IMG/VR virus record: IMGVR_UViG_3300045999_010033
Location: 62,001-126,000 of that record
DNA: 64,000 nucleotides
Reading direction: 5' to 3' (one strand)
Shown here: positions 13,831 through 57,252 of the stretch, piece after piece
Position numbering within the stretch: the stretch's first letter is position 1
How the letters are laid out: each line of letters begins with the position of its first letter
Notes under the pieces: generated by a model
Database searches by the model: none
What the model was told of the DNA's origin: nothing
Seen by the model: only the letters and a program-made list of their open reading frames with translations
Translations under genes and position numbers: made by a program

Positions 13831-14370
13831 TTATAGTTCTTCATTGGATTTGGGCTCATAGTGCTTTTCGTTACGATTGCCTACTAATAGGAAAAAGCAA
13901 TTGAAGCATAGAGGTCTAATGTTGTCTAATATACGATTATTTAAATCACCATCCAAAAAATCTAATAACAATGGATATTTACCATCCGTTATTCGCGCTT
14001 CACTAAACCCGCAACAGCTGCAGACACGTGGTATGTATCCGCTATCAAACATTTTATTTTTGAATCGGTGTAGAGGATACTTTGGATGTTTTCCGTTAAT
14101 GAGGTCTTCAATGTGATATGAGCGATTCCGAATGTGTTTTTTTCTATCAATACCTATCCCTGCGGGGTTTTTTAGACGCTCCATGATTCCATACATTTTA
14201 GCATACTTTTTGTATGTATTGTATGATATTCCGAGTGTACGAGCTGCTTCTGCTGCCGATTTTGATTTTTCTTGGGCAGCGAGTATTTGTGATTCTAAAA
14301 TGGGCCTTGCGCCTAATCCCGGCTTTGTAATTCTAGTAATAACCGGCTTGTCTTGATTGGAATCCTCCAT
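13831..14370 (-). CDS. HTH + Zn-binding degenerate HNH-like protein
   Basis: SAAEAARTLGISYNTYKKY HTH; CSCCG ... LDFLDGDLNN...NIRPLCFNC with catalytic His replaced. Confidence 0.7.
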   Translation of the reverse strand: MEDSNQDKPVITRITKPGLGARPILESQILAAQEKSKSAAEAARTLGISYNTYKKYAKMYGIMERLKNPAGIGIDRKKHIRNRSYHIEDLINGKHPKYPLHRFKNKMFDSGYIPRVCSCCGFSEARITDGKYPLLLDFLDGDLNNRILDNIRPLCFNCFFLLVGNRNEKHYEPKSNEEL

Positions 14371-22012: not shown

Positions 22013-23538
22013 TTTTGTATTATTTTTCTTTTCAATTTAACTTCTAGCATTTTATTAATATTATCAACTGCTACTTGTCCAAATTTAGATTTTATTTTTT
22101 GCAAAAAAGGTGGATAGGAATGATATTCTTCAAACGCTTTATCTCTAAATTCCAATATCTCTGCGGCATCTAATGTTTCGGTTGGTAGTGGTAATGTATC
22201 ATATCCGTGAAACGAATATCCTTCGTATGTATTTGGTAGGGGGATTCCATTCATAATTGCGTTTTTATATAGTTGACTTCCCGGTAATGCCATAGCTGCG
22301 TATGCATTCCATCCAAATGTACACAATTCTTTTGAAAAATCCAAAGTTTTTTGCATTGATTCTTTTGTATCTCCCGGTAATCCGAATATGTAGTTTGCCA
22401 TTACTTCAATATCGGCATCATGTACTTGCTGAATAACTTGTGATATATCTACATCTTCAAATTTTCCTTTAGATACTTCCAAACGAACCGTCTTATCTGC
22501 ACTTTCAATGCCGAGTGCCAACCACTTGATACCTGCTTCTCTTACCAATTTCAATAAATCAGGTCTTCTGACAGTATCAACTCTTGAATACGCCCACATT
22601 CTTAAAAATTTACCATATCCACGTTCCTTTAATAGTTCACACAATGGAACATAATATTTTCTATTCAATAAGAACATTTCATCTGTTATTTTAATAGTAT
22701 GAACTCCCAATTGAACGAGTTTATCAAACTCTTTAATAATAAATTCGGGGGACCAATATCGCATATTGCTGTAGTTGCCTGCGACACCTATCTCATCTTC
22801 ATCGTTTCTATTTAAAATGTTTATCATACAAAATTCACACGCAAATTGACAACCTAAAGATGTTTGAATGGCAGCGTATGGTGAACGTTTAGTTTGGTCG
22901 TATTCGGCGTGCCACATTGGAGCCCTATACAAATCAAGTGGGGTTTCTTTGTATGGGAGTAAATCCCACGCATATCCGGGTAAATCAGTATCCATTTTTT
23001 CATTGGGAACTATTTTTTCAGGTGGGTTTATTTTAATACCATCTTTACTTCTCCAAACTATACCTTTAATGTTCTCTAAATTATCTAAATCAATTTTCTC
23101 TTGAGATAAAACATTCAACAAAGCATAAACGCCTTCATTTGTAAATCCGAAATCTATCGAAGGTTCATCTTTTAAAGTTTTAACTGGAACTGCTTGTATA
23201 TAAGACCCTATGTATGAAATTGGAATTTGTAATTTTTTCTCTTTAAGAAAATTTGAAATATAAACTGCTCCACTCATGTTTACTGTCCCTGCATTCACAT
23301 TTTGACCATATACTACAAAGCATATTAACCTTGGATTTATGATTTTAATTCTATCAAAAATTTGTTCTCTATTTAATTTTTCAGCGTTTGCATCAATTAG
23401 TGATACGGTATATCCTTTGGCTCGGCACGCTTCTGCCAAAAGTAACGCCCAAGTTGGTGGCTCAATTGCCGCATAATCATTTGCCAAATCTTGGTATATA
23501 CCGGTTGCATTTCCCGGTGATATCAATAATACATCCAT
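22009..23538 (-). CDS. cobalamin-binding radical SAM enzyme
   Basis: N-terminal B12-type Rossmann domain; TSLGCQFACEFC; DEMF; LGIES; YIFGLPGDT. Confidence 0.9.
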   Translation of the reverse strand: MDVLLISPGNATGIYQDLANDYAAIEPPTWALLLAEACRAKGYTVSLIDANAEKLNREQIFDRIKIINPRLICFVVYGQNVNAGTVNMSGAVYISNFLKEKKLQIPISYIGSYIQAVPVKTLKDEPSIDFGFTNEGVYALLNVLSQEKIDLDNLENIKGIVWRSKDGIKINPPEKIVPNEKMDTDLPGYAWDLLPYKETPLDLYRAPMWHAEYDQTKRSPYAAIQTSLGCQFACEFCMINILNRNDEDEIGVAGNYSNMRYWSPEFIIKEFDKLVQLGVHTIKITDEMFLLNRKYYVPLCELLKERGYGKFLRMWAYSRVDTVRRPDLLKLVREAGIKWLALGIESADKTVRLEVSKGKFEDVDISQVIQQVHDADIEVMANYIFGLPGDTKESMQKTLDFSKELCTFGWNAYAAMALPGSQLYKNAIMNGIPLPNTYEGYSFHGYDTLPLPTETLDAAEILEFRDKAFEEYHSYPPFLQKIKSKFGQVAVDNINKMLEVKLKRKIIQK

Positions 23539-33652: not shown

Positions 33653-34513
33653 TTATTTTCCATCACAATGCTTACCAAAAAATTCACACCATTCACATAA
33701 TTTAGATGGTTTCTTTGGATACGTAATATCGGTTCTTCTATTTCCATTTTCATCAAAGACGGTATTTACAAAATCCATAAACCCGGCCCAAGCTCTATTA
33801 ACACTTGGCTTACCATTGGCAGGAACATGCTTTGATACTCTTGGAATTGGATATTCAGTATCCGCCGGTATTTTTCTTTTTAAGATAATAAATTCAACAT
33901 CTATCATATCTTGCGATACGCTAAATAACTCCGAGTAGAATTTTTTGTAAATTAATATTTGTGAATTTTTAACTTCATCTTTTTTGTGGTAAGAAGACCA
34001 TCCTTTTGTAGATGTTTTGAAATCTATTATACGATACTTACCATTAAATGAATCCTTAATAACCAAATCAATAAACCCGATAAAATTTACATTATCTTTT
34101 ACCTTTGTATTTAGGGGTTGCTCTATGGCTATTACTTCATCATATTTTAAATCAAAAAATTTGTTGAAGTGTTTTGATTTTTGAAATTGTTCTAAAATAA
34201 GAATACCATCGTTTAGATGCTCAACCAATTCATCTTTTGTGCAAATATCTTCTTTACACTTTTCAGATTCTTTCTGATATCCATCTCGCATCTTTTCTGT
34301 AAGTAATTGTTTCAAATTCATAGAACGGTCTGCCTGCGATTTCGATAATCGCAAGCAGACGTCTATGTAAGATTGAAGCACTTCGTGCATTGCCGTTCCG
34401 AATATTAGGCTTACATTGGATTTAGATTCCGAAAGTTCATCTATGTAATTTAACTTATACTGATTCGGACAATTTTTCCAAGTTGAATATTGGGAAAACG
34501 AAACTCGTGCCAC
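33653..34513 (-). CDS. Cas4/AddB-like PD-(D/E)XK exonuclease
   Basis: WKNCP, FGTAMHE, GFIDLV, IIDFKT, QILIY, CEWC...C (four-Cys Fe-S pattern). Confidence 0.88.
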   Translation of the reverse strand: MARVSFSQYSTWKNCPNQYKLNYIDELSESKSNVSLIFGTAMHEVLQSYIDVCLRLSKSQADRSMNLKQLLTEKMRDGYQKESEKCKEDICTKDELVEHLNDGILILEQFQKSKHFNKFFDLKYDEVIAIEQPLNTKVKDNVNFIGFIDLVIKDSFNGKYRIIDFKTSTKGWSSYHKKDEVKNSQILIYKKFYSELFSVSQDMIDVEFIILKRKIPADTEYPIPRVSKHVPANGKPSVNRAWAGFMDFVNTVFDENGNRRTDITYPKKPSKLCEWCEFFGKHCDGK

Positions 34514-37890: not shown

Positions 37891-37920
37891 CAATATAAGG
37901 AAAATTTATCAAAATTCAAA
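37891..37920 (-). promoter_or_regulatory. Bacteroidota sigma-type promoter
   Basis: TTTG-N19-TATATTG. Confidence 0.65.
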
Positions 37921-40461
37921 AAATTTCTTAGCCTTTTGCGTTTCAGGAGTTGGTTTCGTCCATTTTAGTGCGTTATAGAAATCATCAATTTTATTATCCA
38001 ATTCTGCTTTATAAATACCCTCTCTATCAATATAGTTGGTTATAAAATCCATTATCTCCTGCGGGTCATTATAATCTCTAAAAGCCACTGCTTCGAGCCC
38101 TAATGGGTTTGTTTTAAGGTACACCCACTTAACTTTATCACCATCACGTATTGGTTCGTGTTTGAATGGGCAGTTGAAAAATTTAAGAAGTCTATTGTAG
38201 GATATTCCTGCTTTTACGTGAGCAGGTGTTCCTTTTTCAAAGTTTGCTACCGTATCTCCTTTTTTCCATCCGGCATCATATTTACTCAATTCTTTAACTG
38301 CTCCACCTTTTGCTATTTTATTTACAGGAACATTGATTAGGTTTTTTTTAAACTCCATAAGTTCACCATCAATATGTTCTTTGGACTTACCCATTAGGAT
38401 TTCTTTTAACATCTTTGCCATAAAATCCTGAAACGCTTTCGGAAACGATGAACGAACCACATCCAATCCTTTAACATCAAGTTTATCACATTTGATTCCA
38501 TTTTTTAGAACCATCCATTGAGCGTAACGTTTCTTTGCTACCCAAAATCCAGCCTTACTAATATATTCCTTTTTAATTTCGAAGCGATGCTTTTCTTTTG
38601 GAATGAAAAAGAATTTCTCTGCAAATATATCGTAAAACTTATTTAGGAATGCCTGCGTTTCTTCTGCAACGGTATTGACTTCTTGTGCCATCCTTTGTTC
38701 ATCAAACTCTTTGTATTCTGGATATCTATGTTTAATCAATGGCTCTGCCATCATATAGATAGAGTCGGTATCAATATAAACATTGTAATCATCTTTTGTT
38801 CCGAGTTCTTTCCAATATTTGATGTTTGCCATTTCCGCCGTTTTCTTAATAACAGTTTGGCCCGTAACAGTAACTGCCTCCGCATTATCAATATCGTAAA
38901 ACCGAAAGGCAGGAAGACCAAGAACACCATACATAGAATTAAGAAGGATTTTCTGAACCAGCTGCCTTTTAGCATAAAATTCATATTTTTCCGTATCGCC
39001 CGCATCACCATACTGCTTTTCTAATTTTCTAAATTCAACACGTTTTTCAAACCAGTCATTTAGAATATCTGCAATAAGGCCCGGTGAATCTTGAGAGTAT
39101 AGAACTCCATTTGCAGCAACACCTAAATTACCATCTATAATTACTTCATTTAATTCTTTTCTATTGTATTCATATTGGCTACCATCTTTTCCAACTAATT
39201 TATAAATCTGGTCTTCACCTTTAATCCATTTCTCTGGATTCCAATTTTGAATTTTACCAACCTTTGTTTCGGGGCTGATATTTAGTGTCATAATGATTGA
39301 TGGGTACAGAGATGTCAAATCCAAGTCATAAATCCAGTCATACTTACCAACGATGGGTTCTTTAACATATGCTCCAATGAACTTTTCCTCATTATTATCT
39401 CGTAGTGCTTGCATCCTTTCTTTTCGGTCCTTTGGTTTGTTGGATGCAACCAGCCCTTTCTTTTTAAGATAAGCAAGACAAGCACCTTCCAACCACTTTG
39501 ATGAAAATATGTAATCTTCATATGGGACAAATCCTGCATGACATACTGCCCTACACAATTCAATGAACTGAAGTTTTTCATCCATTGCTACAATCAATTC
39601 TACATCCACAATGTTATACTCAATAAACTTTTCCAAATCCTTTTCAAAAAGCTCATCAAGATTGCCACCATATTCTACCTTACCTCTGCCAATTTCTTTT
39701 TTAGCTATATAATCCAAAGTGTAACTCGGTTCAAGTGTGTATGTGTAGGTTTTATATAGATTAAGATAATCTAATATATTCACCCCACCGAATGAATACT
39801 TTTGTCTATAAGGTGACCAAAAACATTGACCGATATGTGATAATCTATCTGCGTTTTGTTTACCACAAACGTTTTTAATTCGATTGTAAAGATATGGTAC
39901 ATCAAAAAAATCTATGTTCCAACCAGTTATGATCGTTGGACAAACTTCCTCGTAATAATTAAGGAAAGCAAGTAGGAGATTTTTCTCGTTATCAAAAACG
40001 TGGACGTTAGCCGCCTTATCATTTCTAACAAATTTTTTATTATCATTTTTTATAATTCGGTTTTTATCTAACACAAAAACATCATATTCACCTGCCATTG
40101 AATCGTGTGCGGCAATTGATGTTATTTCATTCATCGCTTGTTCGGTAGAAGGTAATCCCGTATTCATTTCAACTTCAATATCAAACGCCATTATCCGATG
40201 GCCGGTAGAAGGTAAATCCGAATCGTAAATATCTACAAGCACTCTAGTGGTTTCGGGAATATCCGCCTCAAAAAGTTCATCGGTATCATCTTTATCCCAA
40301 CTATGGATACGCGTTAATCTATCACCATACATTGAAAGGTGTTGCCCACGTGGGTCTTTTCTGTATGCATATTTTCTATATGGCATAGTAAAATACCCTT
40401 TTTGGTCATCCCAAATATGCATTGTATTTTTATGACGTTCGTAATATATATTTTGATACAT
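37909..40461 (-). CDS. gp43: family B DNA polymerase with 3'-5' exonuclease
   Basis: FDIE, GWNIDFFD, YNIVD; DLTSLYPS, KILLNSMYG, YIDTDS; C-terminal KKFFEF. Confidence 0.97.
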   Translation of the reverse strand: MYQNIYYERHKNTMHIWDDQKGYFTMPYRKYAYRKDPRGQHLSMYGDRLTRIHSWDKDDTDELFEADIPETTRVLVDIYDSDLPSTGHRIMAFDIEVEMNTGLPSTEQAMNEITSIAAHDSMAGEYDVFVLDKNRIIKNDNKKFVRNDKAANVHVFDNEKNLLLAFLNYYEEVCPTIITGWNIDFFDVPYLYNRIKNVCGKQNADRLSHIGQCFWSPYRQKYSFGGVNILDYLNLYKTYTYTLEPSYTLDYIAKKEIGRGKVEYGGNLDELFEKDLEKFIEYNIVDVELIVAMDEKLQFIELCRAVCHAGFVPYEDYIFSSKWLEGACLAYLKKKGLVASNKPKDRKERMQALRDNNEEKFIGAYVKEPIVGKYDWIYDLDLTSLYPSIIMTLNISPETKVGKIQNWNPEKWIKGEDQIYKLVGKDGSQYEYNRKELNEVIIDGNLGVAANGVLYSQDSPGLIADILNDWFEKRVEFRKLEKQYGDAGDTEKYEFYAKRQLVQKILLNSMYGVLGLPAFRFYDIDNAEAVTVTGQTVIKKTAEMANIKYWKELGTKDDYNVYIDTDSIYMMAEPLIKHRYPEYKEFDEQRMAQEVNTVAEETQAFLNKFYDIFAEKFFFIPKEKHRFEIKKEYISKAGFWVAKKRYAQWMVLKNGIKCDKLDVKGLDVVRSSFPKAFQDFMAKMLKEILMGKSKEHIDGELMEFKKNLINVPVNKIAKGGAVKELSKYDAGWKKGDTVANFEKGTPAHVKAGISYNRLLKFFNCPFKHEPIRDGDKVKWVYLKTNPLGLEAVAFRDYNDPQEIMDFITNYIDREGIYKAELDNKIDDFYNALKWTKPTPETQKAKKFFEF

Positions 40462-40465
40462 TTAA

Positions 40466-42106
40466 TTAAATTAAGTTTTGGTTTGTATAAACAATTGTTG
40501 CGTTCATCCAACCATTTGGTATAAACAAGTCTGCTTTGTGAATTACTTGTATTTTTTCAATTTCATTTAAATTCAATTTACCACTTTTTAAAATACTTTC
40601 CAATTTTTTTGCAAGATTATCACTATTTCCACCATGAACCCAAGTTATAGTTTTAAACTTATGTGGCATAATAATTCTTGCACACAATTCGGTAAGGTGT
40701 TCATCATCCATTTGATTGGATTGCCATTCTTGTAAATGTTTATCGGAAAATGTTAAATCCAATTTGAATAGATACGTGCTATCATCATTTTGAGTTATCT
40801 TATACGAATCAAGATTATTATCGTTTAATAGTTTGTGTGTGTTTAGTATAGTAACCGCGTGTGATACGTGTGATGTATCTTTTAGAATGTTTTTATAATT
40901 TTCAATTTCCGCATCTTCATTCTTTTTGAGTCTAACATTGGATGTATCGGCTAATAAATTATGAAATTTGGCAATCTTTTTAACCAAATCTCTTAACGCG
41001 ATTGGAAACGTCGTATTTCTAAATTTAACTTTTAATCTAGCAAAAGGTATCATCGATTCTGGAGTTAAAACAAATATCCATTTTCTGTTATTATATTCCG
41101 CCGGCCATTGACTAGAATTCGGCCACAAATAAATGGTTGCAATATAAGTACCATCGGGTGATACTACATCTACTGTTGGTTTATCTAACTCTGACAAGTG
41201 TAATGGATGAATGTTTTGTTGCCCATTTGACATTCTATATAGAGTTTGTAATTTGTCAGTTTGAGATTTTCTAATAGTTTCATATGTGAATAAGTTTCCC
41301 ATATATTTTTCACCATCTAAATCAATTATATGCAACATATCACCATCATCAGCCGAGACCTGCTTCATATCAATATAATGCCTTATCAAATTTCCACAAT
41401 TTGATGGAAAATAATAATGTGAAAGTTTATTACTTTGTACAATTTCATCATTTTCAATCAGTTCATATTTCAATTGTTTCCCTATTCTATATTGATATCT
41501 AACTCTAGAAAACTCAATTAGCCCATAATAATCTATTTTAAATGGTAATCCTTTAAATAATTTAGATTTACTATACCAACCATTATAACTTTTCCCTAAC
41601 CCATGCTTTTCAATAAATTCATCAAATTCAACTTCATAAACATCCACAATTATTTTAACCAACGATTTTGTAAATTGTGTGGGTGTTAATGCCTCAATTG
41701 GATCTGTTGTTTCATAATTATATTTAGCAATACGATACTTGTTATCCGGAGTGACGTAGCCTATTTCTTCAAAATAGGAAAAATTATGTGGTGCGATTGA
41801 ACCACCTAATTGCGCCTGACCTACTGATTCACTTGTATTTCTTTTAATTTTACCTAAAGTTTTACCTATAAACTTTGTTTTGAAATCCTCATCGCTGCAC
41901 CTACTACTATTATTTGCTCGTAGTATATAGTAATCACCATCTTTATTTTTTACAATTTGGTTAATAACCATATTACCACCATAGCCTATGGAATTATCAT
42001 CCCATTCACTTAAAAAATTTTGACCGTTTATACCATGCTCATTTGGTTGATTTGCGATAAGAAAAGTTAAATCTTTTGAAAAGGTTTCAGAATACAATTT
42101 TTGCAT
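40466..42106 (-). CDS. putative degenerate GHKL/MORC-like domain + NucS/DUF91-like PD-(D/E)XK nuclease
   Basis: FLSEWDDNSI and VGQAQLGG resemble Bergerat motifs; D...EWQ....DDEHL..L...ITWV resembles ExQ-type restriction-fold nucleases. Confidence 0.5.
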   Translation of the reverse strand: MQKLYSETFSKDLTFLIANQPNEHGINGQNFLSEWDDNSIGYGGNMVINQIVKNKDGDYYILRANNSSRCSDEDFKTKFIGKTLGKIKRNTSESVGQAQLGGSIAPHNFSYFEEIGYVTPDNKYRIAKYNYETTDPIEALTPTQFTKSLVKIIVDVYEVEFDEFIEKHGLGKSYNGWYSKSKLFKGLPFKIDYYGLIEFSRVRYQYRIGKQLKYELIENDEIVQSNKLSHYYFPSNCGNLIRHYIDMKQVSADDGDMLHIIDLDGEKYMGNLFTYETIRKSQTDKLQTLYRMSNGQQNIHPLHLSELDKPTVDVVSPDGTYIATIYLWPNSSQWPAEYNNRKWIFVLTPESMIPFARLKVKFRNTTFPIALRDLVKKIAKFHNLLADTSNVRLKKNEDAEIENYKNILKDTSHVSHAVTILNTHKLLNDNNLDSYKITQNDDSTYLFKLDLTFSDKHLQEWQSNQMDDEHLTELCARIIMPHKFKTITWVHGGNSDNLAKKLESILKSGKLNLNEIEKIQVIHKADLFIPNGWMNATIVYTNQNLI

Positions 42107-42132: not shown

Positions 42133-42164
42133 CTAATATACACAAATTATTTCATATTTCCAAA
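42133..42164 (-). promoter_or_regulatory. Bacteroidota sigma-type promoter
   Basis: TTTG-N20-TATATTAG. Confidence 0.65.
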
Positions 42165-42169
42165 AGGCG

Positions 42170-43009
42170 TTAGAACTTGTAAAGTCCCCCAATATTCCAA
42201 AATAATATAGTACCCTCCAAAGTATCAATGTTTTCTTCTAACCATTTCCATTGCTTAATATCCCAAAATTGATTACATGGAAATGGTGCGGAGTACCCAT
42301 TTAGTCTATTTTCAAAAGGATATTCGGATTTTCGAACATTTATGGGTATGTGTATTCCACTTTTTTTAAGTGTTTTATTAATTGAATGAACCGATGATAC
42401 ACACGTTGACCAAACCTTCTTATTAGTTTTTGGAAAAAAATCTTTTAGTTCTTCTCTATAAAATCCCCTCACTAATCCCGATAGTGTTACGCCACTACCA
42501 CTTGAAACTACTAAATTATCAAAATGTGAAAATGGTAATATCCTATCTGCTAAATAATCCTTATAGTAATCGTGATCAAATGCGTATGGTAACATTTGCC
42601 ATTCGTTTTTATTGGCATCCCTTTTTAAGGAATTATACATTACCTGCATCATGTTTGGTTTAATAGGATTTAAGTGCGTTTTAGGATATGAATTTTTAAT
42701 AAAATCAATATACTCTTTTGATATTTTTTTAGAATCAGGATATGATGCATAAAATTCAATATCCAATTCCTCACATATTGCCGCCAATACCCACGCCGTC
42801 CAACTGCCATCTACTGAAAGATGTGTCAGTGGTCTATCTTTCTTTATATATTTTTTAACCAATTCATACACCGCGGCAGTTTTGCCCCAAGGTGGTAAAA
42901 TTGTACCATCTCCCATTAAATCATCTCTTTTTACCCAAACATCTCTTCCTTTTACTTTATACAATTCCAAAGGTGTGTTCTCATTAAGACCGTTTAATTT
43001 TATGTCCAT
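42170..43009 (-). CDS. fold-type II PLP-dependent enzyme (ACC deaminase/D-cysteine desulfhydrase-like)
   Basis: TPL, VWVKRDDL, PPWGK (PLP Lys), VSSGSGVT, YWD-like FWDIK, LFWNIG. Confidence 0.82.
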   Translation of the reverse strand: MDIKLNGLNENTPLELYKVKGRDVWVKRDDLMGDGTILPPWGKTAAVYELVKKYIKKDRPLTHLSVDGSWTAWVLAAICEELDIEFYASYPDSKKISKEYIDFIKNSYPKTHLNPIKPNMMQVMYNSLKRDANKNEWQMLPYAFDHDYYKDYLADRILPFSHFDNLVVSSGSGVTLSGLVRGFYREELKDFFPKTNKKVWSTCVSSVHSINKTLKKSGIHIPINVRKSEYPFENRLNGYSAPFPCNQFWDIKQWKWLEENIDTLEGTILFWNIGGLYKF

Positions 43010-44505
43010 TTGTAGATTCCTTTATCGTTATTAAATAATTCATCACGCATATGTTTGGGTGAGAATCCATATATTTTCTCAAAATTATCCGATATGACAT
43101 ATGTCAAGTTTTTACGATTTTTAAAATTAATTATAGGGTCGTTGATAATAATATCTTCAATATATGTTTTAAAGTTTGTACCTTTTTGAAAGGCCCGCTT
43201 TTCTTGATCTAATATTTCGTCAGGTAGTTTTCCTCTAAACGCGTTTGCCAGAGGTAATTTCCATTGATTTCCTACCGAAAGAAATTCATTTGGTAAGTTT
43301 GTAGTATAATTTAAAAAATCTACATCAAAAAATGGACAACGCAATTCAATTGTACCGTAATTCATAAAGATTGTATTTCCTCTCAATAAGTTACCGTAGT
43401 ATTGTTTTTCAAACAACTTTTTTCGAATATCACTCCAATCGGGTTTTTTGCTAAACATTCTGAACATACCATATGATCCGTACGCCTCATCTGAGCCTTC
43501 ACCACTAAACGCAACTTTGATGCCATCCTTTGCCATTTGTTCGGCAATAAATGATTGTAAAACTCCCACTTCCATCTGAACCGTTGATGGGTATTCAATA
43601 ACTTTTATAGATTCAAGAAACCTTTGCTTTATTATAGCATCATCTTTCGGTACAAAAACTTCAACAAGTTCTATCCCCAAATATTTGGCACAAACTCTTG
43701 CTTTTTGCAAATCTTTTGATGATTGGTCAAACGCAATCGTATATGCTTTAAGATTTGGTATCCGCTTAGATAATAGGTAAGTAATTACTGCAGAATCGAT
43801 TCCACCACTCAGAGAAGTTGCAATCGGGACATCCGATAATAATCTCTTATCTACTGCAGTTTCCAATAACTTAAATGTTGTTTCCGAAACGTCTTCGTGT
43901 GATGTTGCTTCGGTTGGTGTTTCTGAAAAAGAAAAATAGTAATCACTGCATACTTTTAATTTATTTGTATCAAGATTAATTTCTACAAGAGAATTTTTTG
44001 GTACAAATTTAATTTCAGAACTTCTATATTTTGTTGCGATTGCCTTTATTTCACTTGCAATTATATATTCGTTTTTGTTCAGGATATATAATGGTAGTTT
44101 CCCAACCCAATCTCTAGATAAAATCAATTTATTTTTATCGTAAATAACAAAAGAAAACATACCAGTTAACCTGCGTAGTTCGTTTTCTTTATATAAAAAC
44201 AATATTATTTCCGAATCTGAATTTGATTTAAACGTATATCCTCTCTTTTCATATTCTAATCTGAGTTCCGGATAATTCCATATTTCTCCATTTACTATTA
44301 ACCAAGTATTTTCATATTGCATTGGTTGGTTACCCGATTCGGATATATCATTTATAGACAATCGATTGTGTCCTAATATTATTTTTTTATCTTTGTATGT
44401 AAATTCTTGAATACCTCTATTATCTTTGCCACGATGCTCAATCTCGTTAAGCATTGTGTTTACATCATCTTTACTACAACCAATTGTTGCAACAATTCCA
44501 CACAT
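43000..44505 (-). CDS. asnB: asparagine synthetase B-like glutamine amidotransferase/ATP-dependent amide ligase
   Basis: MCGI, HRG, HNRLSI, GNQPM, NGEIWN, SDSE, SLSGGIDS, SGEGSDE, ELRCPF. Confidence 0.92.
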   Translation of the reverse strand: MCGIVATIGCSKDDVNTMLNEIEHRGKDNRGIQEFTYKDKKIILGHNRLSINDISESGNQPMQYENTWLIVNGEIWNYPELRLEYEKRGYTFKSNSDSEIILFLYKENELRRLTGMFSFVIYDKNKLILSRDWVGKLPLYILNKNEYIIASEIKAIATKYRSSEIKFVPKNSLVEINLDTNKLKVCSDYYFSFSETPTEATSHEDVSETTFKLLETAVDKRLLSDVPIATSLSGGIDSAVITYLLSKRIPNLKAYTIAFDQSSKDLQKARVCAKYLGIELVEVFVPKDDAIIKQRFLESIKVIEYPSTVQMEVGVLQSFIAEQMAKDGIKVAFSGEGSDEAYGSYGMFRMFSKKPDWSDIRKKLFEKQYYGNLLRGNTIFMNYGTIELRCPFFDVDFLNYTTNLPNEFLSVGNQWKLPLANAFRGKLPDEILDQEKRAFQKGTNFKTYIEDIIINDPIINFKNRKNLTYVISDNFEKIYGFSPKHMRDELFNNDKGIYKWT

Positions 44506-44506
44506 A

Positions 44507-45205
44507 TTATTTATTTAATATTTTTAGTAACTCTATGGTTTTTTTCTTTTCGTCGTTCATAGTTCCTATGTGGCAGGAACATGCCAATACTGATACTTTT
44601 TCTAAAGTCAATCCACTTTCTCTAGCTAAGAATTTTCCCATACTTACTAATGCAGAATAATCTGCGTATCCACTTTTAGATACTCGGTTTGAACGTAATA
44701 TTGATGTCAAATATAACTTTCCATTTCTTGGTTTAAGATCAATTGCAATCATACATGGTTGTGAATATTGATTTTTTGCATCACGAAGTGGTTCGTAAAT
44801 GATTAATTCACACCTTTTTACTGCCTTGCCAGTTTTTAATATTTTGATTACATTTTCTACTTGATTAAAAGCACCATTCCAAGATACCATTCTTCCCCAA
44901 TAGCTATCGTACCATTTATCTTTTATAAAAGAATATTCAAGTCCTTCTTCTTCACTGAAGAACTGATTATCGGATTTTTTCATTTGTGGTTCTACAAATG
45001 TTACTGATGAGGCAAAATCAATTCTATCATCTCCCATTATTTGCCTGAAGTGTGGGTCAAACCAATCATCGTTTTGAAATGTGGTTATCTCTGTCATAAC
45101 ATTTAGCTCTTCGGTCAAATCACCTACTTTAATTCCATTTTCTAAAAGATGCTTGGATACTTTTACCCATGCATCGCCAGGAGAAACTGCTTGAATAACT
45201 GTCAT
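44507..45205 (-). CDS. divergent thymidylate-synthase-fold enzyme, predicted cytosine-directed
   Basis: SYWGR, NQ, PC catalytic Cys, RSNRVSKSGYAD (Asp at TS Asn177 position), SCHIG. Confidence 0.8.
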   Translation of the reverse strand: MTVIQAVSPGDAWVKVSKHLLENGIKVGDLTEELNVMTEITTFQNDDWFDPHFRQIMGDDRIDFASSVTFVEPQMKKSDNQFFSEEEGLEYSFIKDKWYDSYWGRMVSWNGAFNQVENVIKILKTGKAVKRCELIIYEPLRDAKNQYSQPCMIAIDLKPRNGKLYLTSILRSNRVSKSGYADYSALVSMGKFLARESGLTLEKVSVLACSCHIGTMNDEKKKTIELLKILNK

Positions 45206-45210
45206 TTTGT

Positions 45211-46782
45211 TTATGGTTTATAAAATACAAAAATAGGTTCGTATTTGTATGATTGTCCTTCTATTTGCATACTATTTTTTGCTTTAGATAAATCCATACC
45301 TGTCATAGGACTCATTGTCATTTTTATTTTACCCCGATATTCACACCCCAATTCGGTAAGAATGTTAATACTATCTTGTTCAAGTGGATACCATTTATCG
45401 GGTCCTACTTTTATATCTGCAATGTTCCAACAAATATATCTATCATTTCTCAAATATTCAAAAGCGGTAGTTAACGTGGGTTTCAAAAATCCATCTCTCC
45501 AACTTTCATAGTTGTTAAATTTCTTAAATGATTGGGTATCATCATCGGAATATCTTTCTCTATCAAAATATGGTGGAGATGTAAAAACAAAATCCAATTT
45601 GCCTTTATATTTTTGAAATCTTACTTCATTGTGAATTATTTCAGACCCGGTTGTAAAAATATCATAGGTATTCGCGTGACCCCAAAATGAGTTAGCTGCT
45701 CCAGGTACTTTGTTATTAAAAAACTCCGCAAGGTATTCATATCTTGTTTTTCCTATTTCAGGAATCCAATTTTCGGTATTAGGGTCGTTTCCAATATAGT
45801 GGATATTTCTATCATCAATAGAAAGAGCACCCAATATTCTTCCACCCCATCCTGCCGACGGGTCGTAGATGTTAATAACTTTTTGATTTTTTATATGGGT
45901 TGTGAATCTTTGATATAAATATTTTGCAGTAAGTGGTGGAAAGTTTACCACCGCTTGTGTTCCCATTCCAATACGAAATGCGGCAGTGGCTTCAGGAAAT
46001 ATTCTTTGCCCTAATGGATAGATTTTTATTTGAATTGGTTGCTTTGGTAAATCAACCAAATTATCTATATTTTCACCCCAGTCGGCGGTTCTAAGTGATG
46101 AAATATTTTCATATTTTAAGATACCCTCCTTATAAAGTTCTTTTACCTCTTGCGCGGTGATTGGTGCAGATGGCACTTTACTATCTGCTTGTGAAAGGCA
46201 AAACCCATAACCTTCTTTTTTATCCCCATTCGCCCATTTTATTATCCATTCTTTGCCACTTTGAATATGAGAGTTATGGAATTCGGGATTATTAATATGT
46301 AGTGTTTTTGAAAACCTATACATACCATCTTGGCGGGTCAACCTTCTCATTTGTTTAATGAATTCTGGCAAGTAAGTATCATCTGAAAATACATCGTATA
46401 TCGATGGTTTTGGCTTTTCGTAAGTAGAACCACCAATTCCAGTTTTATACATTGCTGGAAAAAATTGATTTACCGGTGTAGCAAATTTATTAAAGTTAAA
46501 AATTACTTCATCGCCATTATCATCTTTTTCTTCAAACTCATTTACTTTGTAAGTTTGTAGTTTTGAAAATTGTTCAATCATTTCTGATTCATCTACCCCA
46601 ATCCGAGGAGGTGCACCGGTTTCATTCCATTTTCTTACTGCCAATTCTCTGAAAAATGCTACCCATTCTTCAAATTGTTTGAATGGCATTTTAAGAACAT
46701 CTTCATAAAGTAAGTTTACTTCAGGTTCGTACAACCAATCATTTTTTTCGTAAAAATATTTTTTTGAATAATTGAAGCCCAT
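45211..46782 (-). CDS. amino-group DNA methyltransferase-like protein (SPPY)
   Basis: NFPP, YDPSAGWGGR (motif I), FTSPPYF..E.YS (motif IV), WNIAD, EPIF. Confidence 0.85.
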   Translation of the reverse strand: MGFNYSKKYFYEKNDWLYEPEVNLLYEDVLKMPFKQFEEWVAFFRELAVRKWNETGAPPRIGVDESEMIEQFSKLQTYKVNEFEEKDDNGDEVIFNFNKFATPVNQFFPAMYKTGIGGSTYEKPKPSIYDVFSDDTYLPEFIKQMRRLTRQDGMYRFSKTLHINNPEFHNSHIQSGKEWIIKWANGDKKEGYGFCLSQADSKVPSAPITAQEVKELYKEGILKYENISSLRTADWGENIDNLVDLPKQPIQIKIYPLGQRIFPEATAAFRIGMGTQAVVNFPPLTAKYLYQRFTTHIKNQKVINIYDPSAGWGGRILGALSIDDRNIHYIGNDPNTENWIPEIGKTRYEYLAEFFNNKVPGAANSFWGHANTYDIFTTGSEIIHNEVRFQKYKGKLDFVFTSPPYFDRERYSDDDTQSFKKFNNYESWRDGFLKPTLTTAFEYLRNDRYICWNIADIKVGPDKWYPLEQDSINILTELGCEYRGKIKMTMSPMTGMDLSKAKNSMQIEGQSYKYEPIFVFYKP

Positions 46783-46830: not shown

Positions 46831-48063
46831 TCATTTTTGCCAAATCCATATGGGTTCACCAAAGGCATGATTTTTTGTTTGTTCTGCTTTTTCTTTAAAT
46901 TCATCTGAAAAATAATCAGAAGCGGCTGTGCCTGCTCCACCACTATTTGGTCGTTTTGTCATTTCCATGCCTATACATCCCCTATAAGTAAGCCCTTTTG
47001 ATTCCAAAAAATCATTCATGGGGTTTACGATGGGAACATATCCTTTATCAGGAGATGAATATACATCGGATATGTTTATTGCCAAAATTCCATTTGTTTT
47101 TATTGTTGGTATGATTTTGTCAAGTGTTTTGTGTAAAAAATTTTTATTCCAATCATCAACTGATTTATATCTAACCCAGCTTTGGGTATCATCGTATGAA
47201 TATTTTTCAGTATTGAAATATGGTGGTGAAGTAAAAACTGTATCAAAAAAGTTTTCAAATCTAGAATAGTCTAAGTCTTCCGCAGGAGATTCTATCATTT
47301 CTGCAGTTTTTTCATTTTCAAAAAAAGTTTTATTCTTTTTATAAAATTCAATTTGTTTTTTATAACCTTCGGTGTTTGTCTTATTTGGATCTATTCCAAC
47401 ATAATTCTTTCCATATTCACTTGCAAAAAATCCACAAAGTCTATCTCCCCATCCTGCCGAAAAATCTAATATATTTTCAGATTTAAAGTAATCATAAAAC
47501 GCCTTTGCAATAGCCGGTTTAAATTGAGCAGGTACATACTTTCTCATCTGAATGGCTAATATGATATTTTTTTTATTTACCATATCTAAACTTTGTTCAA
47601 GTGTAAAGAACGCCCGAACAACAGTTCGTATACCTTTTGGTGTTTGCCATGTTTTCCACGGAGAGGGCATTCTAATCCAATCAACTTTGTGTCTGGTTTG
47701 AATATGAAATATATTAGATGCCTTATTACCGGTAATTGTTTTTTTAAAAAACATTGGTTTACCACCGAATGTTAAATCATATGCTGAATTATTTTCGTTT
47801 CTTGGAAACCATTCACCTTCTACAAGGATGTCTGGCCACCATGTCCCTTTTAATTTTCTAAAATCCTCCAATACTTCATCGGCGGTTAGTTCAGGAAATG
47901 GATATGGATATGTAAACAACACTTCTGAAATCTCTTCTACTATTTCTTCTTTTTCCCAAGTTTTTTTTATCCAATCCCATTCTTCCTTTTCAATGGTAAG
48001 ATATGGGTGCATCCCATAAAACTTTTTGAAATAATCTTTTATTGTAACTTTTTGAGAAGACAT
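46831..48063 (-). CDS. amino-group DNA methyltransferase-like protein (SPPY)
   Basis: QFKP, LDFSAGWGDR, FTSPPYF..E.YS, INISD, EPIW. Confidence 0.85.
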   Translation of the reverse strand: MSSQKVTIKDYFKKFYGMHPYLTIEKEEWDWIKKTWEKEEIVEEISEVLFTYPYPFPELTADEVLEDFRKLKGTWWPDILVEGEWFPRNENNSAYDLTFGGKPMFFKKTITGNKASNIFHIQTRHKVDWIRMPSPWKTWQTPKGIRTVVRAFFTLEQSLDMVNKKNIILAIQMRKYVPAQFKPAIAKAFYDYFKSENILDFSAGWGDRLCGFFASEYGKNYVGIDPNKTNTEGYKKQIEFYKKNKTFFENEKTAEMIESPAEDLDYSRFENFFDTVFTSPPYFNTEKYSYDDTQSWVRYKSVDDWNKNFLHKTLDKIIPTIKTNGILAINISDVYSSPDKGYVPIVNPMNDFLESKGLTYRGCIGMEMTKRPNSGGAGTAASDYFSDEFKEKAEQTKNHAFGEPIWIWQK

Positions 48064-51475: not shown

Positions 51476-52534
51476 TTACACTTTCTTATCAAAAACAAAT
51501 ATGGGCTCCAATTTAATTCCATTACCCGAAACCGATGATAACACCAAATACAAAATATCAGTTTTAATAAATCCCACCGCTTCTGCCATGTTGATTGTTT
51601 CTGCTTCAATACCAACATATTTGGGTGTATTTGCAATATTTATCATCATTTTTCCGGTAGGTTTTAATCCTTTATGACAATTTATCATGGTTTGTTTTAA
51701 GAACCCATTCATCCAATCCCTTTGATTTGGAAATTTTTTATATGACTGTGTATCTTCATCCGAATACTTTTCAGTATCAAAATACGGTGGAGATGTGAAG
51801 CATAAATCTAAACTCTCGGTATCGGGTACAAATTCTTCAGATCCAATTTTATGCAGTAATATCTGCTTATTAAAGAGGTTTAATTCATCTCGTAGTGATA
51901 CTAACCCTTCGTATGTTTTAGTTGAAGGATCAGTTCCTATATAGGTTTTACATCTACTTGTAAGAAATCCTGTCAATCTGCCACCCCATCCACAACTCAT
52001 ATCCCAAACAATCTCACCACCATAGGTATTATATATCCATTTAGCCACCGATGGTCTGAAATTACTGACGGACTGGTTTCCTCCATATATCTTAAAATTT
52101 TGCCTCAATCGATTTAAGGTAAATTTTCCATTACCATGTTTCAATTGCCAAGTCCAAGTTTTTTTAATTATTTCTTTTAATTTATCATCATTGTTCCAAT
52201 ATTCAATCGGTTTCATTTTACTTGAACCACATATAACATCAACCCAATGTGGAAAATAAGACCAAGCAAGAGATAGACAGTGCATGGTTTGCTGTAATTG
52301 ATTCCCCTTACAAATAGTAGATTCATCAAACGAAATCAAAGATTTTAGTTGATTCAGTTTTTCATGCTTTGGTACATTGTAGTGTGGAAATCCTCTACGC
52401 CTATGATATCTAAATATCACATCTTCTGCGTAATCCCTATCGGTTATAGAAAATATATCCGATATGATTCGGTGATATTCCAATTCCAATTCATCAACAT
52501 CCACAAATTTTGAAAAAGCAGTGTAGTTTATCAT
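51476..52534 (-). CDS. amino-group DNA methyltransferase-like protein (SPPY)
   Basis: NFRP, WDMSCGWGGR, FTSPPYF..EKYS, INIAN, EPIF. Confidence 0.85.
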   Translation of the reverse strand: MINYTAFSKFVDVDELELEYHRIISDIFSITDRDYAEDVIFRYHRRRGFPHYNVPKHEKLNQLKSLISFDESTICKGNQLQQTMHCLSLAWSYFPHWVDVICGSSKMKPIEYWNNDDKLKEIIKKTWTWQLKHGNGKFTLNRLRQNFKIYGGNQSVSNFRPSVAKWIYNTYGGEIVWDMSCGWGGRLTGFLTSRCKTYIGTDPSTKTYEGLVSLRDELNLFNKQILLHKIGSEEFVPDTESLDLCFTSPPYFDTEKYSDEDTQSYKKFPNQRDWMNGFLKQTMINCHKGLKPTGKMMINIANTPKYVGIEAETINMAEAVGFIKTDILYLVLSSVSGNGIKLEPIFVFDKKV

Positions 52535-57220: not shown

Positions 57221-57252
57221 CAAATATAGGAAAAATTTCCGAATATTCCAAA
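57221..57252 (-). promoter_or_regulatory. Bacteroidota sigma-type promoter (consensus)
   Basis: TTTG-N20-TATATTTG. Confidence 0.75.

What the first reader, a model, noticed from the sequence alone, without database searches (positions are those of the whole stretch)
40466..42106. Cryptic GHKL-plus-nuclease protein between the modification operon and PolB: a possible restriction arm
The N-terminus has eroded Bergerat-fold motifs (FLSEWDDNSI for ELIDNS; RANNSS for DNG.G; VGQAQLGG for G.FG.G). The C-terminus LDLTFSDKHLQEWQSNQMDDEHLTEL...TITWV resembles ExQ-type NucS/DUF91-like nucleases (ENQ...DHDHL..L...IIW). It has its own host-type promoter. Inference: a nuclease that cuts unmodified host or competitor-phage DNA and spares the modified genome, making the locus a phage restriction-modification-like system.
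Basis: inference. Interest (0 to 1): 0.78.

Follow-up and report, generated by a model that had tools for sequence, protein, structure and literature searches.

The report
Phage GHKL ATPase fused to nuclease
A lake-water T4-like phage carries an unannotated gene that joins an ATP-driven clamp domain to a restriction-enzyme-like DNA-cutting domain; it sits in a swap-in slot next to DNA-modification genes, so it is probably a weapon against other DNA, but its target has not been tested.

Summary
The ORF (window 40466-42106, minus strand, 546 aa) is real and under purifying selection: a strain variant differs at 14 synonymous sites and 1 non-synonymous site. No Pfam, PHROG, PADLOC, NCBIfam or PDB sequence search names it.

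- Residues 1-~430 are a GHKL ATPase plus S5 transducer, as in MutL, MORC, GyrB and Hsp90 (Foldseek probability 1.0).
- Residues ~430-546 have a restriction-endonuclease-like fold. The best match is NucS (Z 8.2), followed by many restriction enzymes. D450 and E460-x-Q462 sit where PD-(D/E)xK enzymes carry their catalytic residues.

The restriction-modification reading is only partly supported:
- The gene is accessory. Of 36 related contigs where the slot after the PLP gene is resolved, 22 are empty, 8 hold this family and 6 hold something else.
- The other occupants include a GmrSD-like DUF262+HNH enzyme and a different GHKL protein.
- Five complete genomes with the TS-AsnB-PLP operon lack the family.
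- The closest homologs (73% identity) sit upstream of gp32 instead.
- The "own" promoter is the promoter that drives PolB in relatives without the gene.

Most likely it is an ATP-gated nuclease cassette used in conflict between genomes. Its target is untested. I file it as a new variant of the GHKL-nuclease kind (GHKL-Shedu, Tiamat, MutL/MutH).

The parts
40466..42106 (-). Whole ORF, 546 aa plus stop codon. It is a single-gene cassette with a 63-nt gap to the PLP-like gene upstream and a 4-nt gap to PolB downstream.
   Evidence: Purifying selection: 14 synonymous to 1 non-synonymous change. Family of 29 clusters at 90% identity and 14 representatives at 50% identity.
41537..42106 (-). GHKL (Bergerat-fold) ATPase-like domain, about res 1-190. 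Motif I has E34 and N38. Motif II is degenerate, N65-N-S-S-R in place of D-x-G-x-G. Motif III is G96..G101-G102-S103, inside a low-confidence 'lid' (res 86-99). G116..T119 may be motif IV.
   Evidence: AlphaFold2 model, pLDDT 85. Foldseek matches to MutL-NTD, Hsp90, GyrB, MORC and Topo VI-B at E 1e-9 to 1e-7. Nearest ESM Atlas clusters are 98-100% PF13589. One family member hits PF13589 at E 7.5e-6. Conservation.
41012..41536 (-). Middle domain, about res 191-365, a mixed alpha/beta transducer (ribosomal-S5-fold type), as in MutL, GyrB and MORC.
   Evidence: Foldseek alignments to MutL LN40, GyrB 43-kDa, MORC2/3 and Topo VI-B span about 400-450 columns, which takes in the GHKL domain plus this domain. 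'Morc S5 domain' and MutL appear among AFDB matches covering query residues up to about 380-430. The boundaries are my reading of the secondary structure.
40820..41011 (-). Helical linker, about res 366-429, three helices. It carries the invariant K395 and E397 (KKxEDxE).
   Evidence: Secondary structure; conservation. That E397 is the helix-borne acidic residue of the nuclease site is inference.
40469..40819 (-). C-terminal restriction-endonuclease-like (PD-(D/E)xK-type) domain, about res 430-546. D450 lies in strand 2 and E460-W-Q462 in strand 3. D467-D468-x-H470 starts the next helix, followed by R477, W489-V-H-G-G and K501.
   Evidence: Domain-only model, pLDDT 93.8, topology beta-beta-beta-alpha-beta-alpha-beta preceded by helices. 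VIA-align: NucS 2vld Z 8.2, AF1548 Z 8.0, then Can2/Card1, FokI, BglII, Bse634I, Cfr10I, EcoRII, NucC. Foldseek: CdiA-CT, YaeQ, XPF, SfsA, Mrr, DUF4268. Atlas TM 0.59-0.65 to DUF4268 and Replic_Relax clusters.
42135..42163 (-). Sigma-70-like promoter element, TTGGAA, 17 nt, TATATT. It is conserved upstream of orthologs. In relatives without the gene the same element drives PolB.
42170..45205 (-). Upstream neighbours: a TS-like gene (232 aa), an AsnB-like amidotransferase (501 aa) and a PLP-enzyme-like gene (279 aa). This is a presumed DNA-hypermodification operon. It is context, not part of the protein.
   Evidence: Pfam and PHROG hits. The operon is present in 66 viral contigs. Precedent for an AsnB-like enzyme acting on phage DNA: PMC12783734.
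37909..40461 (-). Downstream neighbour, family-B DNA polymerase. Probably co-transcribed with the cassette.
   Evidence: The 4-nt gap and the absence of a terminator-like site between the two genes.

Best explanation
The gene encodes a three-part enzyme: a GHKL ATPase-like head, a MutL/MORC-type transducer, and a C-terminal restriction-endonuclease-like domain with a D...E-x-Q site.

By analogy with other GHKL proteins, two copies would dimerise through the ATPase heads when nucleotide binds. This would close a clamp around DNA, and that step would license the nuclease domains to cut.

The gene is a mobile, single-gene accessory cassette. It lands just downstream of strong replication-gene promoters (PolB, gp32) in freshwater and marine T4-like phages, so it is made together with the replication proteins.

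Its most likely role is conflict between genomes: cutting host DNA or the DNA of a co-infecting phage. The phage's own DNA would be spared, most plausibly because it is hypermodified by the TS-AsnB-PLP and methyltransferase-like genes.

Shown: the folds, the conserved residues, purifying selection, the accessory status, the hotspot and the shared promoter. Inferred: ATP gating, DNA cleavage, the target, and self-protection by modification.
For: Folds:
- GHKL plus transducer.
- REase-like C-terminal domain.

Conserved residues:
- The catalytic-type residues E34 and N38, and D450, E460, Q462, D467, D468 and H470, are invariant or nearly so down to 25% identity.
- The C-terminal motif block is the best conserved part of the protein.

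Constraint: 14 synonymous to 1 non-synonymous change between strains.

Hotspot:
- In contigs with AsnB at 73% identity or more, the slot after PLP is empty in 22, holds this family in 8 and holds other genes in 6.
- Other occupants are a GmrSD_N+HNH protein (42 and 30 bits), a different HATPase_c_3 protein (27.9 bits, above cut-off) and a very divergent member of this same family.
- Interchangeable nuclease-type genes in one slot is the pattern seen in conflict loci.

Precedents for the same architecture working as an ATP-dependent defence nuclease:
- VcSduA, where mutations aimed at the ATPase and at the nuclease were both made (PMC12137116).
- Tiamat, shown to be an ATPase and a DNase in vitro (bioRxiv 10.64898/2026.09.30.754977).
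- From established knowledge: the MutL N-terminal domain activates the PD-(D/E)xK nuclease MutH, which nicks the unmethylated strand.

No partner gene is conserved next to the cassette. Self-protection therefore has to come from a genome-wide property or from regulation.
Against: - Nothing here shows nuclease or ATPase activity.
- Motif II lacks the adenine-binding Asp in the window's clade (Asn65, or Gln in a sister clade). In Hsp90, MutL and GyrB that change abolishes ATP binding (established knowledge).
- The lysine of the classic E-x-K is Gln here.
- The structural matches for the C-terminal domain are moderate. Z 8.2 is at the level the tool says can arise without relatedness. Foldseek E-values are no better than 1.5e-3.
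- One divergent family member has E-x-M and lacks D468.
- The link to the modification operon is not obligate.
- The neighbours of distant members (UvdE, gp32, UvsX) would also fit a repair or recombination role.
- No RNA run was listed.
Confidence: 0.5

Rival explanations
1. It is a type IV-like enzyme that cuts foreign modified DNA, for example a competitor phage with a different base modification, rather than unmodified DNA.
For: An alternative occupant of the very same slot is a GmrSD_N (DUF262) + HNH protein. By established knowledge, that family cuts modified DNA. AspBHI and EcoRII-type domains are among the structural matches.
Against: No recognisable modified-base reader domain (SRA, DUF262 or similar) turns up in Pfam scans. 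The structural matches do not single out modification-dependent enzymes.
Confidence: 0.15
2. It is a repair or recombination nuclease of the replication module: a fused MutL-NTD/MutH-like or NucS-like enzyme that processes mismatches or branched DNA.
For: The best structural match of the C-terminal domain is the repair endonuclease NucS. The N-terminal two domains match MutL LN40. Family members always lie within replication and repair genes: PolB and clamp, gp32-UvsX-RNaseH, UvdE.
Against: The gene is dispensable: absent from 5 complete related genomes and from 22 of 36 slots. It is interchangeable with a GmrSD-like enzyme. There is no mismatch-sensor partner and no NucS N-terminal domain. 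The whole region is simply the early-gene module of these phages.
Confidence: 0.15
3. It is a selfish, homing-type nuclease cassette that spreads among related phages by cutting the empty site between a promoter and PolB or gp32.
For: There is presence/absence polymorphism with clean junctions at two promoter-proximal sites next to essential genes. A contig in run X3 departs from the window exactly at 40464, the PolB start. Free-standing homing endonucleases of T4 occupy similar positions (established knowledge; see also PMC10055350, listed).
Against: At 546 aa with an ATPase clamp, it is unlike any known homing endonuclease family. Its divergence (46-48% between lineages) matches that of PolB and the clamp, which suggests long vertical residence rather than recent spread.
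Confidence: 0.1
4. It is an rIIA-like counter-defence or membrane-associated GHKL protein whose C-terminal domain no longer cuts DNA.
For: T4 rIIA combines a GHKL head with a variable C-terminal domain (PMC7824862). RIIA proteins appear among viral structure matches (E 1.6e-8 to 1e-5). Motif III of distant members (GVGGSK) resembles rIIA's GLGSKS, by my eye. Motif II is degenerate and E-x-K has become E-x-Q. A single-sequence search of the genome with T4 rIIA found nothing, so the niche may be open.
Against: The profile comparison with T4 rIIA is not significant (E 0.27). The PHROG scan found no family, rIIA families included. RIIA matches are no better than those to topoisomerase, Hsp90 or MutL. 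The C-terminal acidic motif is the most conserved part of the protein, which argues for a working active site.
Confidence: 0.1

Closest known systems
GHKL-Shedu (VcSduA, Shedu type I-D) of Vibrio cholerae
   Same: One polypeptide with an N-terminal GHKL ATPase, a clamp-like middle domain and a C-terminal PD-(D/E)xK nuclease. It acts alone. It has been proposed that the ATPase controls the nuclease (PMC12137116).
   Different: VcSduA is bacterial and defends against phages. Its nuclease is the DUF4263/SduA_C family, which is not detected here. It has canonical motifs I-IV. The window protein has Asn for the motif II Asp and Gln for the nuclease Lys.
Tiamat and Tiamat-like GHL ATPase-nucleases
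   Same: An Hsp90/MORC-type ATPase joined to a C-terminal PD-(D/E)xK nuclease. ATPase and DNase activities were shown in vitro. The effector domain is swappable. The genes often sit near DNA methyltransferases (bioRxiv 10.64898/2026.09.30.754977).
   Different: Tiamat has a large DUF3684 core (TPR-like, metalloprotease-like) where this protein has a compact S5 transducer. There is no sequence match (PADLOC). This family was not found in 185,579 species-representative bacterial and archaeal genomes by a motif-based scan.
MutL N-terminal domain plus MutH (methyl-directed mismatch repair)
   Same: GHKL plus S5 transducer (Foldseek E 7e-9 to 2e-7 to MutL LN40) working with a PD-(D/E)xK nuclease. 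MutH cuts the unmodified strand, so it is the textbook case of a modification-sparing nuclease licensed by a GHKL ATPase (established knowledge).
   Different: Here the two are fused. There is no MutL C-terminal domain, no MutS partner, and no Pfam DNA_mis_repair or MutH hit.
NucS/EndoMS (DUF91) and DUF4268-associated nucleases
   Same: Best structural match of the C-terminal domain (2vld Z 8.2, 100 residues, rmsd 3.1). DUF4268 clusters match at TM 0.62-0.64.
   Different: There is no NucS N-terminal DNA-binding domain and no sequence-level match. The site reads E-x-Q instead of E-x-K, and there is an extra invariant DD-x-H at the start of the next helix.
T4 rIIA
   Same: A GHKL-headed protein of T4-like phages with a variable C-terminal part (PMC7824862). 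The overall fold is similar.
   Different: No significant sequence or profile relationship. Nothing suggests that rIIA carries a REase-like C-terminal domain.
T4 endonucleases II and IV (DenA, DenB)
   Same: Functional analogy only. These are dispensable phage nucleases that cut unmodified cytosine DNA and spare the phage's modified genome (established knowledge).
   Different: Unrelated proteins with no ATPase domain.

Membership tests
GHKL (Bergerat-fold) ATPase superfamily | Bergerat alpha/beta sandwich fold | tested here: met
   Foldseek probability 1.0, E 1e-9 to 1e-7, to Hsp90, MutL, GyrB, MORC and Topo VI-B. Nearest Atlas clusters are 98-100% PF13589.
GHKL (Bergerat-fold) ATPase superfamily | Motif I, E-x-x-x-N (general base and Mg2+ ligand) | tested here: met
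   E34-W-D-D-N38 is invariant in all 25 plus 10 sequences. The Asp that usually follows (N-x-x-D) is Gly41.
GHKL (Bergerat-fold) ATPase superfamily | Motif II, D-x-G-x-G (adenine-binding Asp) | tested here: not met
   The window has N65-N-S-S-R. The clade consensus is N-N-G-S and a sister clade has Q-Q-G-G. Three distant members keep D-x-G-x-G-[MF] in the same columns. The family therefore descends from canonical GHKL proteins, but ATP binding in this protein is uncertain.
GHKL (Bergerat-fold) ATPase superfamily | Motif III, a G-rich ATP lid (G-x-x-G-x-G) | tested here: inconclusive
   S94-V-G96-Q-A-Q-L-G101-G102-S103, with G96, G101 and S103 invariant. It lies beside a low-pLDDT loop (res 86-99), as a lid would. 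The spacing differs from the textbook motif.
Pfam HATPase_c_3 (PF13589; MORC, MutL-like, rIIA-like) | Score above the curated cut-off (25 bits) | tested here: not met
   No hit for the window protein. Only 1 of 25 members hits at E 7.5e-6. Its 50%-identity cluster representative P0030 scores 22.7 bits (E 1.1e-4), below the cut-off.
PD-(D/E)xK (restriction-endonuclease-like) nucleases | Alpha-beta-beta-beta-alpha-beta core fold | tested here: met
   Topology in the pLDDT 93.8 model. Most of the 50 matches listed by VIA-align are REase-fold nucleases, led by NucS at Z 8.2. Foldseek and Atlas agree. The scores are moderate, not decisive.
PD-(D/E)xK (restriction-endonuclease-like) nucleases | Asp in strand 2 and (D/E)-x-K in strand 3 | tested here: inconclusive
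   D450 lies in strand 449-453 and E460-x-Q462 in strand 457-461. E460 and Q462 are invariant and D450 is at least 90% conserved. Lys is replaced by Gln, as in BglII (established knowledge; BglII is a match at Z 5.9). I could not inspect the active-site geometry because the model coordinates are not readable.
Shedu (SduA_C / DUF4263, PF14082) | Match to the DUF4263 nuclease family | tested here: not met
   No Pfam hit, no PADLOC hit and no hit in the genome (though that search had no positive control). No Shedu chain appears among the structural matches listed.
Type IIA / IIB topoisomerase ATPase subunit (GyrB, T4 gp39, Topo VI-B) | TOPRIM domain, or a partner DNA-cleaving A subunit in the genome | tested here: not met
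   The genome has no DNA_gyraseB, DNA_topoisoIV or TP6A_N match (controls rang). The C-terminal domain begins with a three-strand meander, not the beta-alpha-beta of TOPRIM.
T4 rIIA family | Detectable homology to rIIA | tested here: not met
   hhalign E 0.27. No PHROG hit. No tblastn hit in 50,697 phage records.
   The operon occurs without the family in 5 of 5 further complete genomes (control) and in 22 of 36 resolved slots. Close homologs sit elsewhere. The converse, whether every carrier has the operon, could not be settled because the contigs are too short.
   This needs biochemistry or genetics.

The most novel reading that the evidence does not exclude
Freshwater and marine T4-like phages keep a 'weapons slot' directly beside their DNA-hypermodification operon. 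Different nuclease cassettes are swapped into it: this GHKL-REase family, other GHKL proteins, and GmrSD-like enzymes. The phage's own hypermodification serves as the self-mark. Together this would be a true phage-borne restriction-modification analogue, used against the host chromosome and rival phages. The Asp-to-Asn/Gln change in motif II would point to a nucleotide other than ATP as the trigger.
Probability: 0.25. Interest if true: 0.8.

Novelty: new variant of a known kind. Interest (0 to 1): 0.6.

Why it matters
GHKL-ATPase/nuclease fusions have recently been recognised as bacterial anti-phage proteins (GHKL-Shedu, Tiamat, prokaryotic MORCs). This is an unannotated family with the same logic, encoded by lytic T4-like phages that are common in lakes. 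It sits in a slot that also accepts a type IV restriction-like enzyme, next to genes that probably hypermodify the phage DNA.

If the protein cuts DNA lacking that modification, it would show that phages pair a hypermodification with a matching nuclease as their own restriction-modification system. It would also give a compact model (546 aa, one gene) for how a GHKL clamp licenses a nuclease.

Separately, it assigns a fold and a testable active site to a family that every sequence library leaves blank.

Tried and rejected
Sequence libraries:
- Pfam, PHROGs, PADLOC and NCBIfam gave nothing significant for the window protein.
- The Shiga-toxin-B and similar rows for P0037 score 12-17 bits against cut-offs of 80-205 bits. 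They are chance hits in an insert.
- tblastn against 50,697 phage records found no match.
- PDB sequence and profile searches found only chance hits.
- The ESM Atlas feature search on the C-terminal domain scored 0.44, uninformative.
- A profile search with the C-terminal domain alone found only fragments of the same family.
- Scanning all 31 C-terminal domains against Pfam at E up to 10 produced no nuclease family. The only recurring hit was weak, DUF7746, in 4 members (best E 4.9e-4). No paper mentions that family.

Topoisomerase hypothesis (a T4 gp39-like subunit): rejected. The genome has no GyrB, GyrA/ParC or Topo VI-A match, and the C-terminal domain is not TOPRIM.

rIIA hypothesis: not supported at the sequence level.

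A role in making the modification: rejected, because most operon-carrying phages lack the gene.

Other slot occupants:
- The L035 and L049 proteins looked to me like GHKL plus PD...E-x-K.
- Profile comparisons with this family were not significant.
- Only the L035 GHKL call is confirmed by Pfam.

Tool availability and coverage:
I waited the stated 20 calls each time and it ran.
- Records behind metagenome loci could not be searched whole.
With A1 it found no relative. That scan is motif-based, so its sensitivity is limited.
- No RNA run was listed.
Full report
WHAT IS THERE

The window is part of a 221,095-bp virus record that CheckV rates 100% complete. It is a T4-like myovirus. Its PolB is 48.6% identical to that of Microcystis phage Mel-JY01 and about 32% identical to those of Vibrio and Synechococcus T4-likes.

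Read in the direction of transcription, the local gene order is: gp32, UvsX, RNase H, DnaB, a methyltransferase-like gene, class II RNR, PhoH, two more methyltransferase-like genes, a TS-like gene, an AsnB-like gene, a PLP-enzyme-like gene, this ORF, PolB, sliding clamp, dUTPase, clamp loader.

Near-identical DNA is present in at least 20 lake and freshwater metagenome runs from many studies. Contigs from four of them cover the ORF with no indels or joints. One strain variant differs at 15 positions in the ORF, 14 of them synonymous. This is a real gene under purifying selection.

SEQUENCE SEARCHES

Pfam, PHROGs, PADLOC and NCBIfam do not name the protein. Neither does tblastn against 50,697 phage records, nor PDB sequence or profile searches.

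The family is small. It has 29 clusters at 90% identity and 14 representatives at 50% identity among 1.84 billion proteins. All come from metagenomes or viral contigs. A motif-based scan of 185,579 species-representative bacterial and archaeal genomes found no relative.

One member (P0029, with its 50% representative P0030) touches PF13589 HATPase_c_3 (E 7.5e-6 and 1.1e-4; P0030 scores 22.7 bits, below the 25-bit cut-off).

N-TERMINAL TWO-THIRDS

An AlphaFold2 model built on 25 homologs has mean pLDDT 85.
- Foldseek against the PDB gives probability 1.0 and E 1e-9 to 1e-7 to Hsp90, the MutL N-terminal 40-kDa fragment, the GyrB/ParE 43-kDa fragment, MORC2/3 and Topo VI-B. The alignments run about 400-450 columns, which takes in the Bergerat ATPase domain and the transducer behind it.
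- AFDB clusters, BFVD and the ESM Atlas agree. The nearest Atlas clusters are bacterial and viral "ATP-binding proteins" that are 98-100% PF13589 and carry varied C-terminal domains.

- E34-x-x-x-N38 (motif I) is invariant.
- The G-rich stretch G96..G101-G102-S103 borders a low-confidence loop (res 86-99), as an ATP lid would.
- RANNSS lines up column for column with canonical D-x-G-x-G-[MF] in three distant members (HADSGSGM, HADDGRGF).

So the family descends from ordinary GHKL ATPases. In the window's clade, however, the adenine-binding Asp is Asn, and in a sister clade it is Gln. By established knowledge, that substitution abolishes ATP binding in Hsp90, MutL and GyrB. Whether this protein binds ATP, binds another nucleotide or binds none is open.

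C-TERMINAL DOMAIN

I modelled residues 395-546 alone on 31 sequences (pLDDT 93.8). After two helices the chain forms three consecutive strands, a helix, a strand, a helix and a strand. This is the restriction-endonuclease core.
- D450 lies in the second strand and E460-W-Q462 in the third, where PD-(D/E)xK enzymes carry D and (D/E)-x-K.
- D467-D468-x-H470 opens the next helix.
- E460, Q462, D467, D468, H470, R477, W489 and K501 are invariant across all 31 sequences, down to 25% identity, and D450 is at least 90% conserved. This is the best conserved part of the protein.

Structure searches:
- VIA-align over 48,161 PDB representatives puts the repair endonuclease NucS first (2vld, Z 8.2, its nuclease domain), then AF1548 (Z 8.0). 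Below them come Can2, Card1, R.BspD6I, LlaBIII, FokI, BglII, Bse634I, Cfr10I, SfsA, PaqCI, NucC, EcoRII and AspBHI.
- Foldseek gives CdiA-CT of B. pseudomallei, YaeQ, XPF and SfsA in the PDB (best E 6.6e-3).
- In AFDB clusters Foldseek gives CdiA-CT, Mrr, DUF4268 and "restriction endonuclease" entries (E 1.5e-3 to 3e-2).
- Atlas TM-scores reach 0.59-0.65 to DUF4268 and Replic_Relax clusters.

No single score is decisive. The tool itself warns that Z around 8 can occur without relatedness. Still, most of the matches listed are REase-fold nucleases, and the conserved residues sit in the right strands. BglII uses E-x-Q in place of E-x-K (established knowledge), so the Gln is not disqualifying.

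I accept "restriction-endonuclease-like, NucS-like" as the fold with about 85% confidence, and "active nuclease" with less.

WHAT IT IS NOT

- Not a type II topoisomerase subunit. The genome has no GyrB, GyrA/ParC or Topo VI-A match, with positive controls, and the C-terminal domain is not TOPRIM.
- Not detectably rIIA. The hhalign E-value is 0.27 and there is no PHROG hit. RIIA proteins share the generic GHKL-plus-transducer shape, but no better than topoisomerases or Hsp90 do.
- Not Shedu in the family sense. There is no SduA_C/DUF4263 match.

GENOMIC BEHAVIOUR

1. In five viral contigs and two metagenome contigs, with the protein at 46-70% identity, the order TS-AsnB-PLP-this gene-(0-2 methyltransferase-like genes)-PolB is kept.

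2. The closest homologs of all (73% identity; L005, L023, L024) sit directly upstream of gp32-UvsX-RNase H instead. So do members at 25-30% identity (L015, L020-22). Other members lie beside UvdE, beside an SLT gene, or among small unknown ORFs.

3. The TS-AsnB-PLP operon is widespread, occurring in 66 viral contigs. I counted contigs with AsnB at 73% identity or more in which the position after PLP is resolved. That position is empty (21-104 nt to the next conserved gene) in 22, holds this family in 8 (counting the window) and holds something else in 6. These are contigs, not independent lineages.

4. Five further complete or nearly complete genomes with the operon (CheckV 95-100%) contain no member of the family. 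The same profile search found it in the window's genome and in three known carriers.

5. The "something else" is telling (unless noted):
   - L037 and L038 carry a 496-aa GmrSD_N (DUF262, 42 bits) + HNH (30 bits) protein, a type IV restriction-enzyme architecture.
   - L035 carries a 538-aa protein of another family that passes the PF13589 cut-off (27.9 bits) and has a canonical DNGIGM motif II.
   - L051 carries a 535-aa protein that is a very divergent member of the window's family (37.9 bits against the family profile, full length).
   - L049 carries a 513-aa protein with no Pfam match. L039 has two small ORFs.

By eye, the L035 and L049 proteins end in PD...E-M-K and D...E-N-K strings. Profile comparisons with this family were not significant and I had no structure jobs left, so that remains unverified.

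The slot is therefore a hotspot for large, mostly nuclease-type accessory genes.

THE PROMOTER

The TTGGAA-17-TATATT element at 42163..42135 is conserved upstream of orthologs in both genomic positions, down to about 30% protein identity.

In relatives that lack the gene, the same element (TTTGGAAATAcGgAAATaATTTCGTATATT) sits between PLP and PolB. A relaxed form of it (TTGG, 18-20 nt, TA[TC]A[TC]T) occurs 23 times on the coding strand of this genome, including upstream of gp32. The total is 38 on both strands, against 13 in mononucleotide shuffles.

So the cassette sits between a standard early or replication-gene promoter and PolB. With a 4-nt gap and no terminator-like site, it is probably transcribed together with PolB. 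"Own host-type promoter" is half right.

MECHANISM

The best-supported reading is an ATP-gated clamp nuclease.
- GHKL heads dimerise on nucleotide binding.
- The transducer and helical linker pass this on to paired REase-like domains, which then cut DNA.

This is how the same architecture is understood in three known cases:
- GHKL-Shedu (VcSduA), where the authors made variants aimed at the ATPase (E27A) and at the nuclease (PMC12137116).
- Tiamat, shown to be an ATPase and a DNase in vitro (bioRxiv 10.64898/2026.09.30.754977).
- MutL with MutH, by established knowledge.

The accessory status, the swap with a GmrSD-like enzyme and the lack of any conserved partner gene point to conflict between genomes. 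The likely targets are the host chromosome or co-infecting phages. The phage's own DNA would be protected by a genome-wide property.

The neighbouring genes are a plausible source of that property. AsnB-like enzymes are now known to amidate or ligate carboxymethylcytosine in phage DNA (PMC12783734), and the region holds three SPPY-motif methyltransferase-like paralogs. But the modification itself, the nuclease activity and its specificity are all inferred.

Rivals that the evidence does not exclude:
- a type IV-like enzyme aimed at foreign modified DNA;
- a NucS/MutLH-like repair or recombination nuclease;
- a selfish homing-type cassette;
- an rIIA-like ATPase with a dead nuclease domain.

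VERDICT

The restriction-modification interpretation is plausible but not shown. In its strong form, a dedicated arm of this operon, it is contradicted by the gene's distribution.

The protein is a new, unannotated, phage-borne variant of the GHKL-nuclease kind, sitting in a newly described hotspot. Interest is moderate to high (0.6).

Noticed in passing
L037:5371-6861 (also L038:7293-8783); same slot as window 40466-42106: A related phage (AsnB 81% identical) carries a 496-aa GmrSD_N (DUF262) + HNH protein between the PLP gene and PolB. That is a type IV restriction-enzyme architecture inside a lytic T4-like phage.
   Followed up: partly
L035:5579-7195; L049:7827-9368; L051:4171-5778: Three other large proteins occupy the same slot in other relatives. 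One passes PF13589 (canonical DNGIGM). One is a very divergent member of the window family, with E-x-M and ADWGH in place of E-x-Q and MDDEH. One has no match at all. Two end in strings that look like PD...E-x-K, which is unverified.
   Followed up: partly
window 45211-46782, 46831-48063, 51476-52534 (all minus strand): Three paralogous methyltransferase-like genes (523, 410 and 352 aa) carry a TSPPYF motif. Their N6_N4_Mtase hits are weak, below the cut-off, and they have long N-terminal extensions. Their copy number and order vary between related phages. They may be base-modifying transferases rather than plain methylases.
   Followed up: no
window 42170-45205 versus 37909-40461: The TS-like and AsnB-like proteins are 74-83% identical across phages whose PolB is only 52-59% identical and whose clamp is 45-50% identical. 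The PLP-like protein falls into two classes (about 80% or about 45% identity). This points to unusual constraint on, or exchange of, the modification genes.
   Followed up: no
window 42135-42163, 57223-57251, 4517-4545, 9871-9899, 13928-13956, 22316-22344 (minus strand) and elsewhere in the genome: There is a recurring promoter class, TTGGA(A/T)..., 17 nt, (G)TATATT. A relaxed pattern matches 38 times in the genome against 13 in shuffles, 23 of them on the coding strand. In orthologous copies the -35 region often contains the palindrome GATATATC, which could be a regulator site.
   Followed up: partly
window 40464 (run X3): One metagenome contig matches PolB up to 40464 and then continues with unrelated sequence. 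The break is exactly at the cassette/PolB junction, as expected if a co-occurring strain has a different slot content.
   Followed up: no
window 41912-41914 (codon of Asn65) and alignment A2: The motif II Asp of the GHKL fold is replaced by Asn or Gln across whole subclades rather than at random, while the catalytic Glu and Asn of motif I stay invariant. This may mean a changed nucleotide specificity rather than decay.
   Followed up: no
window 33653-34513 (minus strand): A separate 286-aa PDDEXK_1 (Cas4/RecB-like) nuclease gene (78.9 bits) lies a few kb downstream. It is unrelated to the finding.
   Followed up: no
L037:9864-11498 and five other related loci: Some relatives encode a full-length Cpn60/GroEL-type chaperonin (265 bits) in the region downstream of PolB. 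The window has none in the PolB-to-clamp-loader stretch.
   Followed up: no
C-terminal core of four family members (for example P0030 res 490-521): There are weak recurring Pfam hits to DUF7746 (PF24925, best E 4.9e-4) over the D...E-x-Q...DD stretch. I found no literature on that family.
   Followed up: partly
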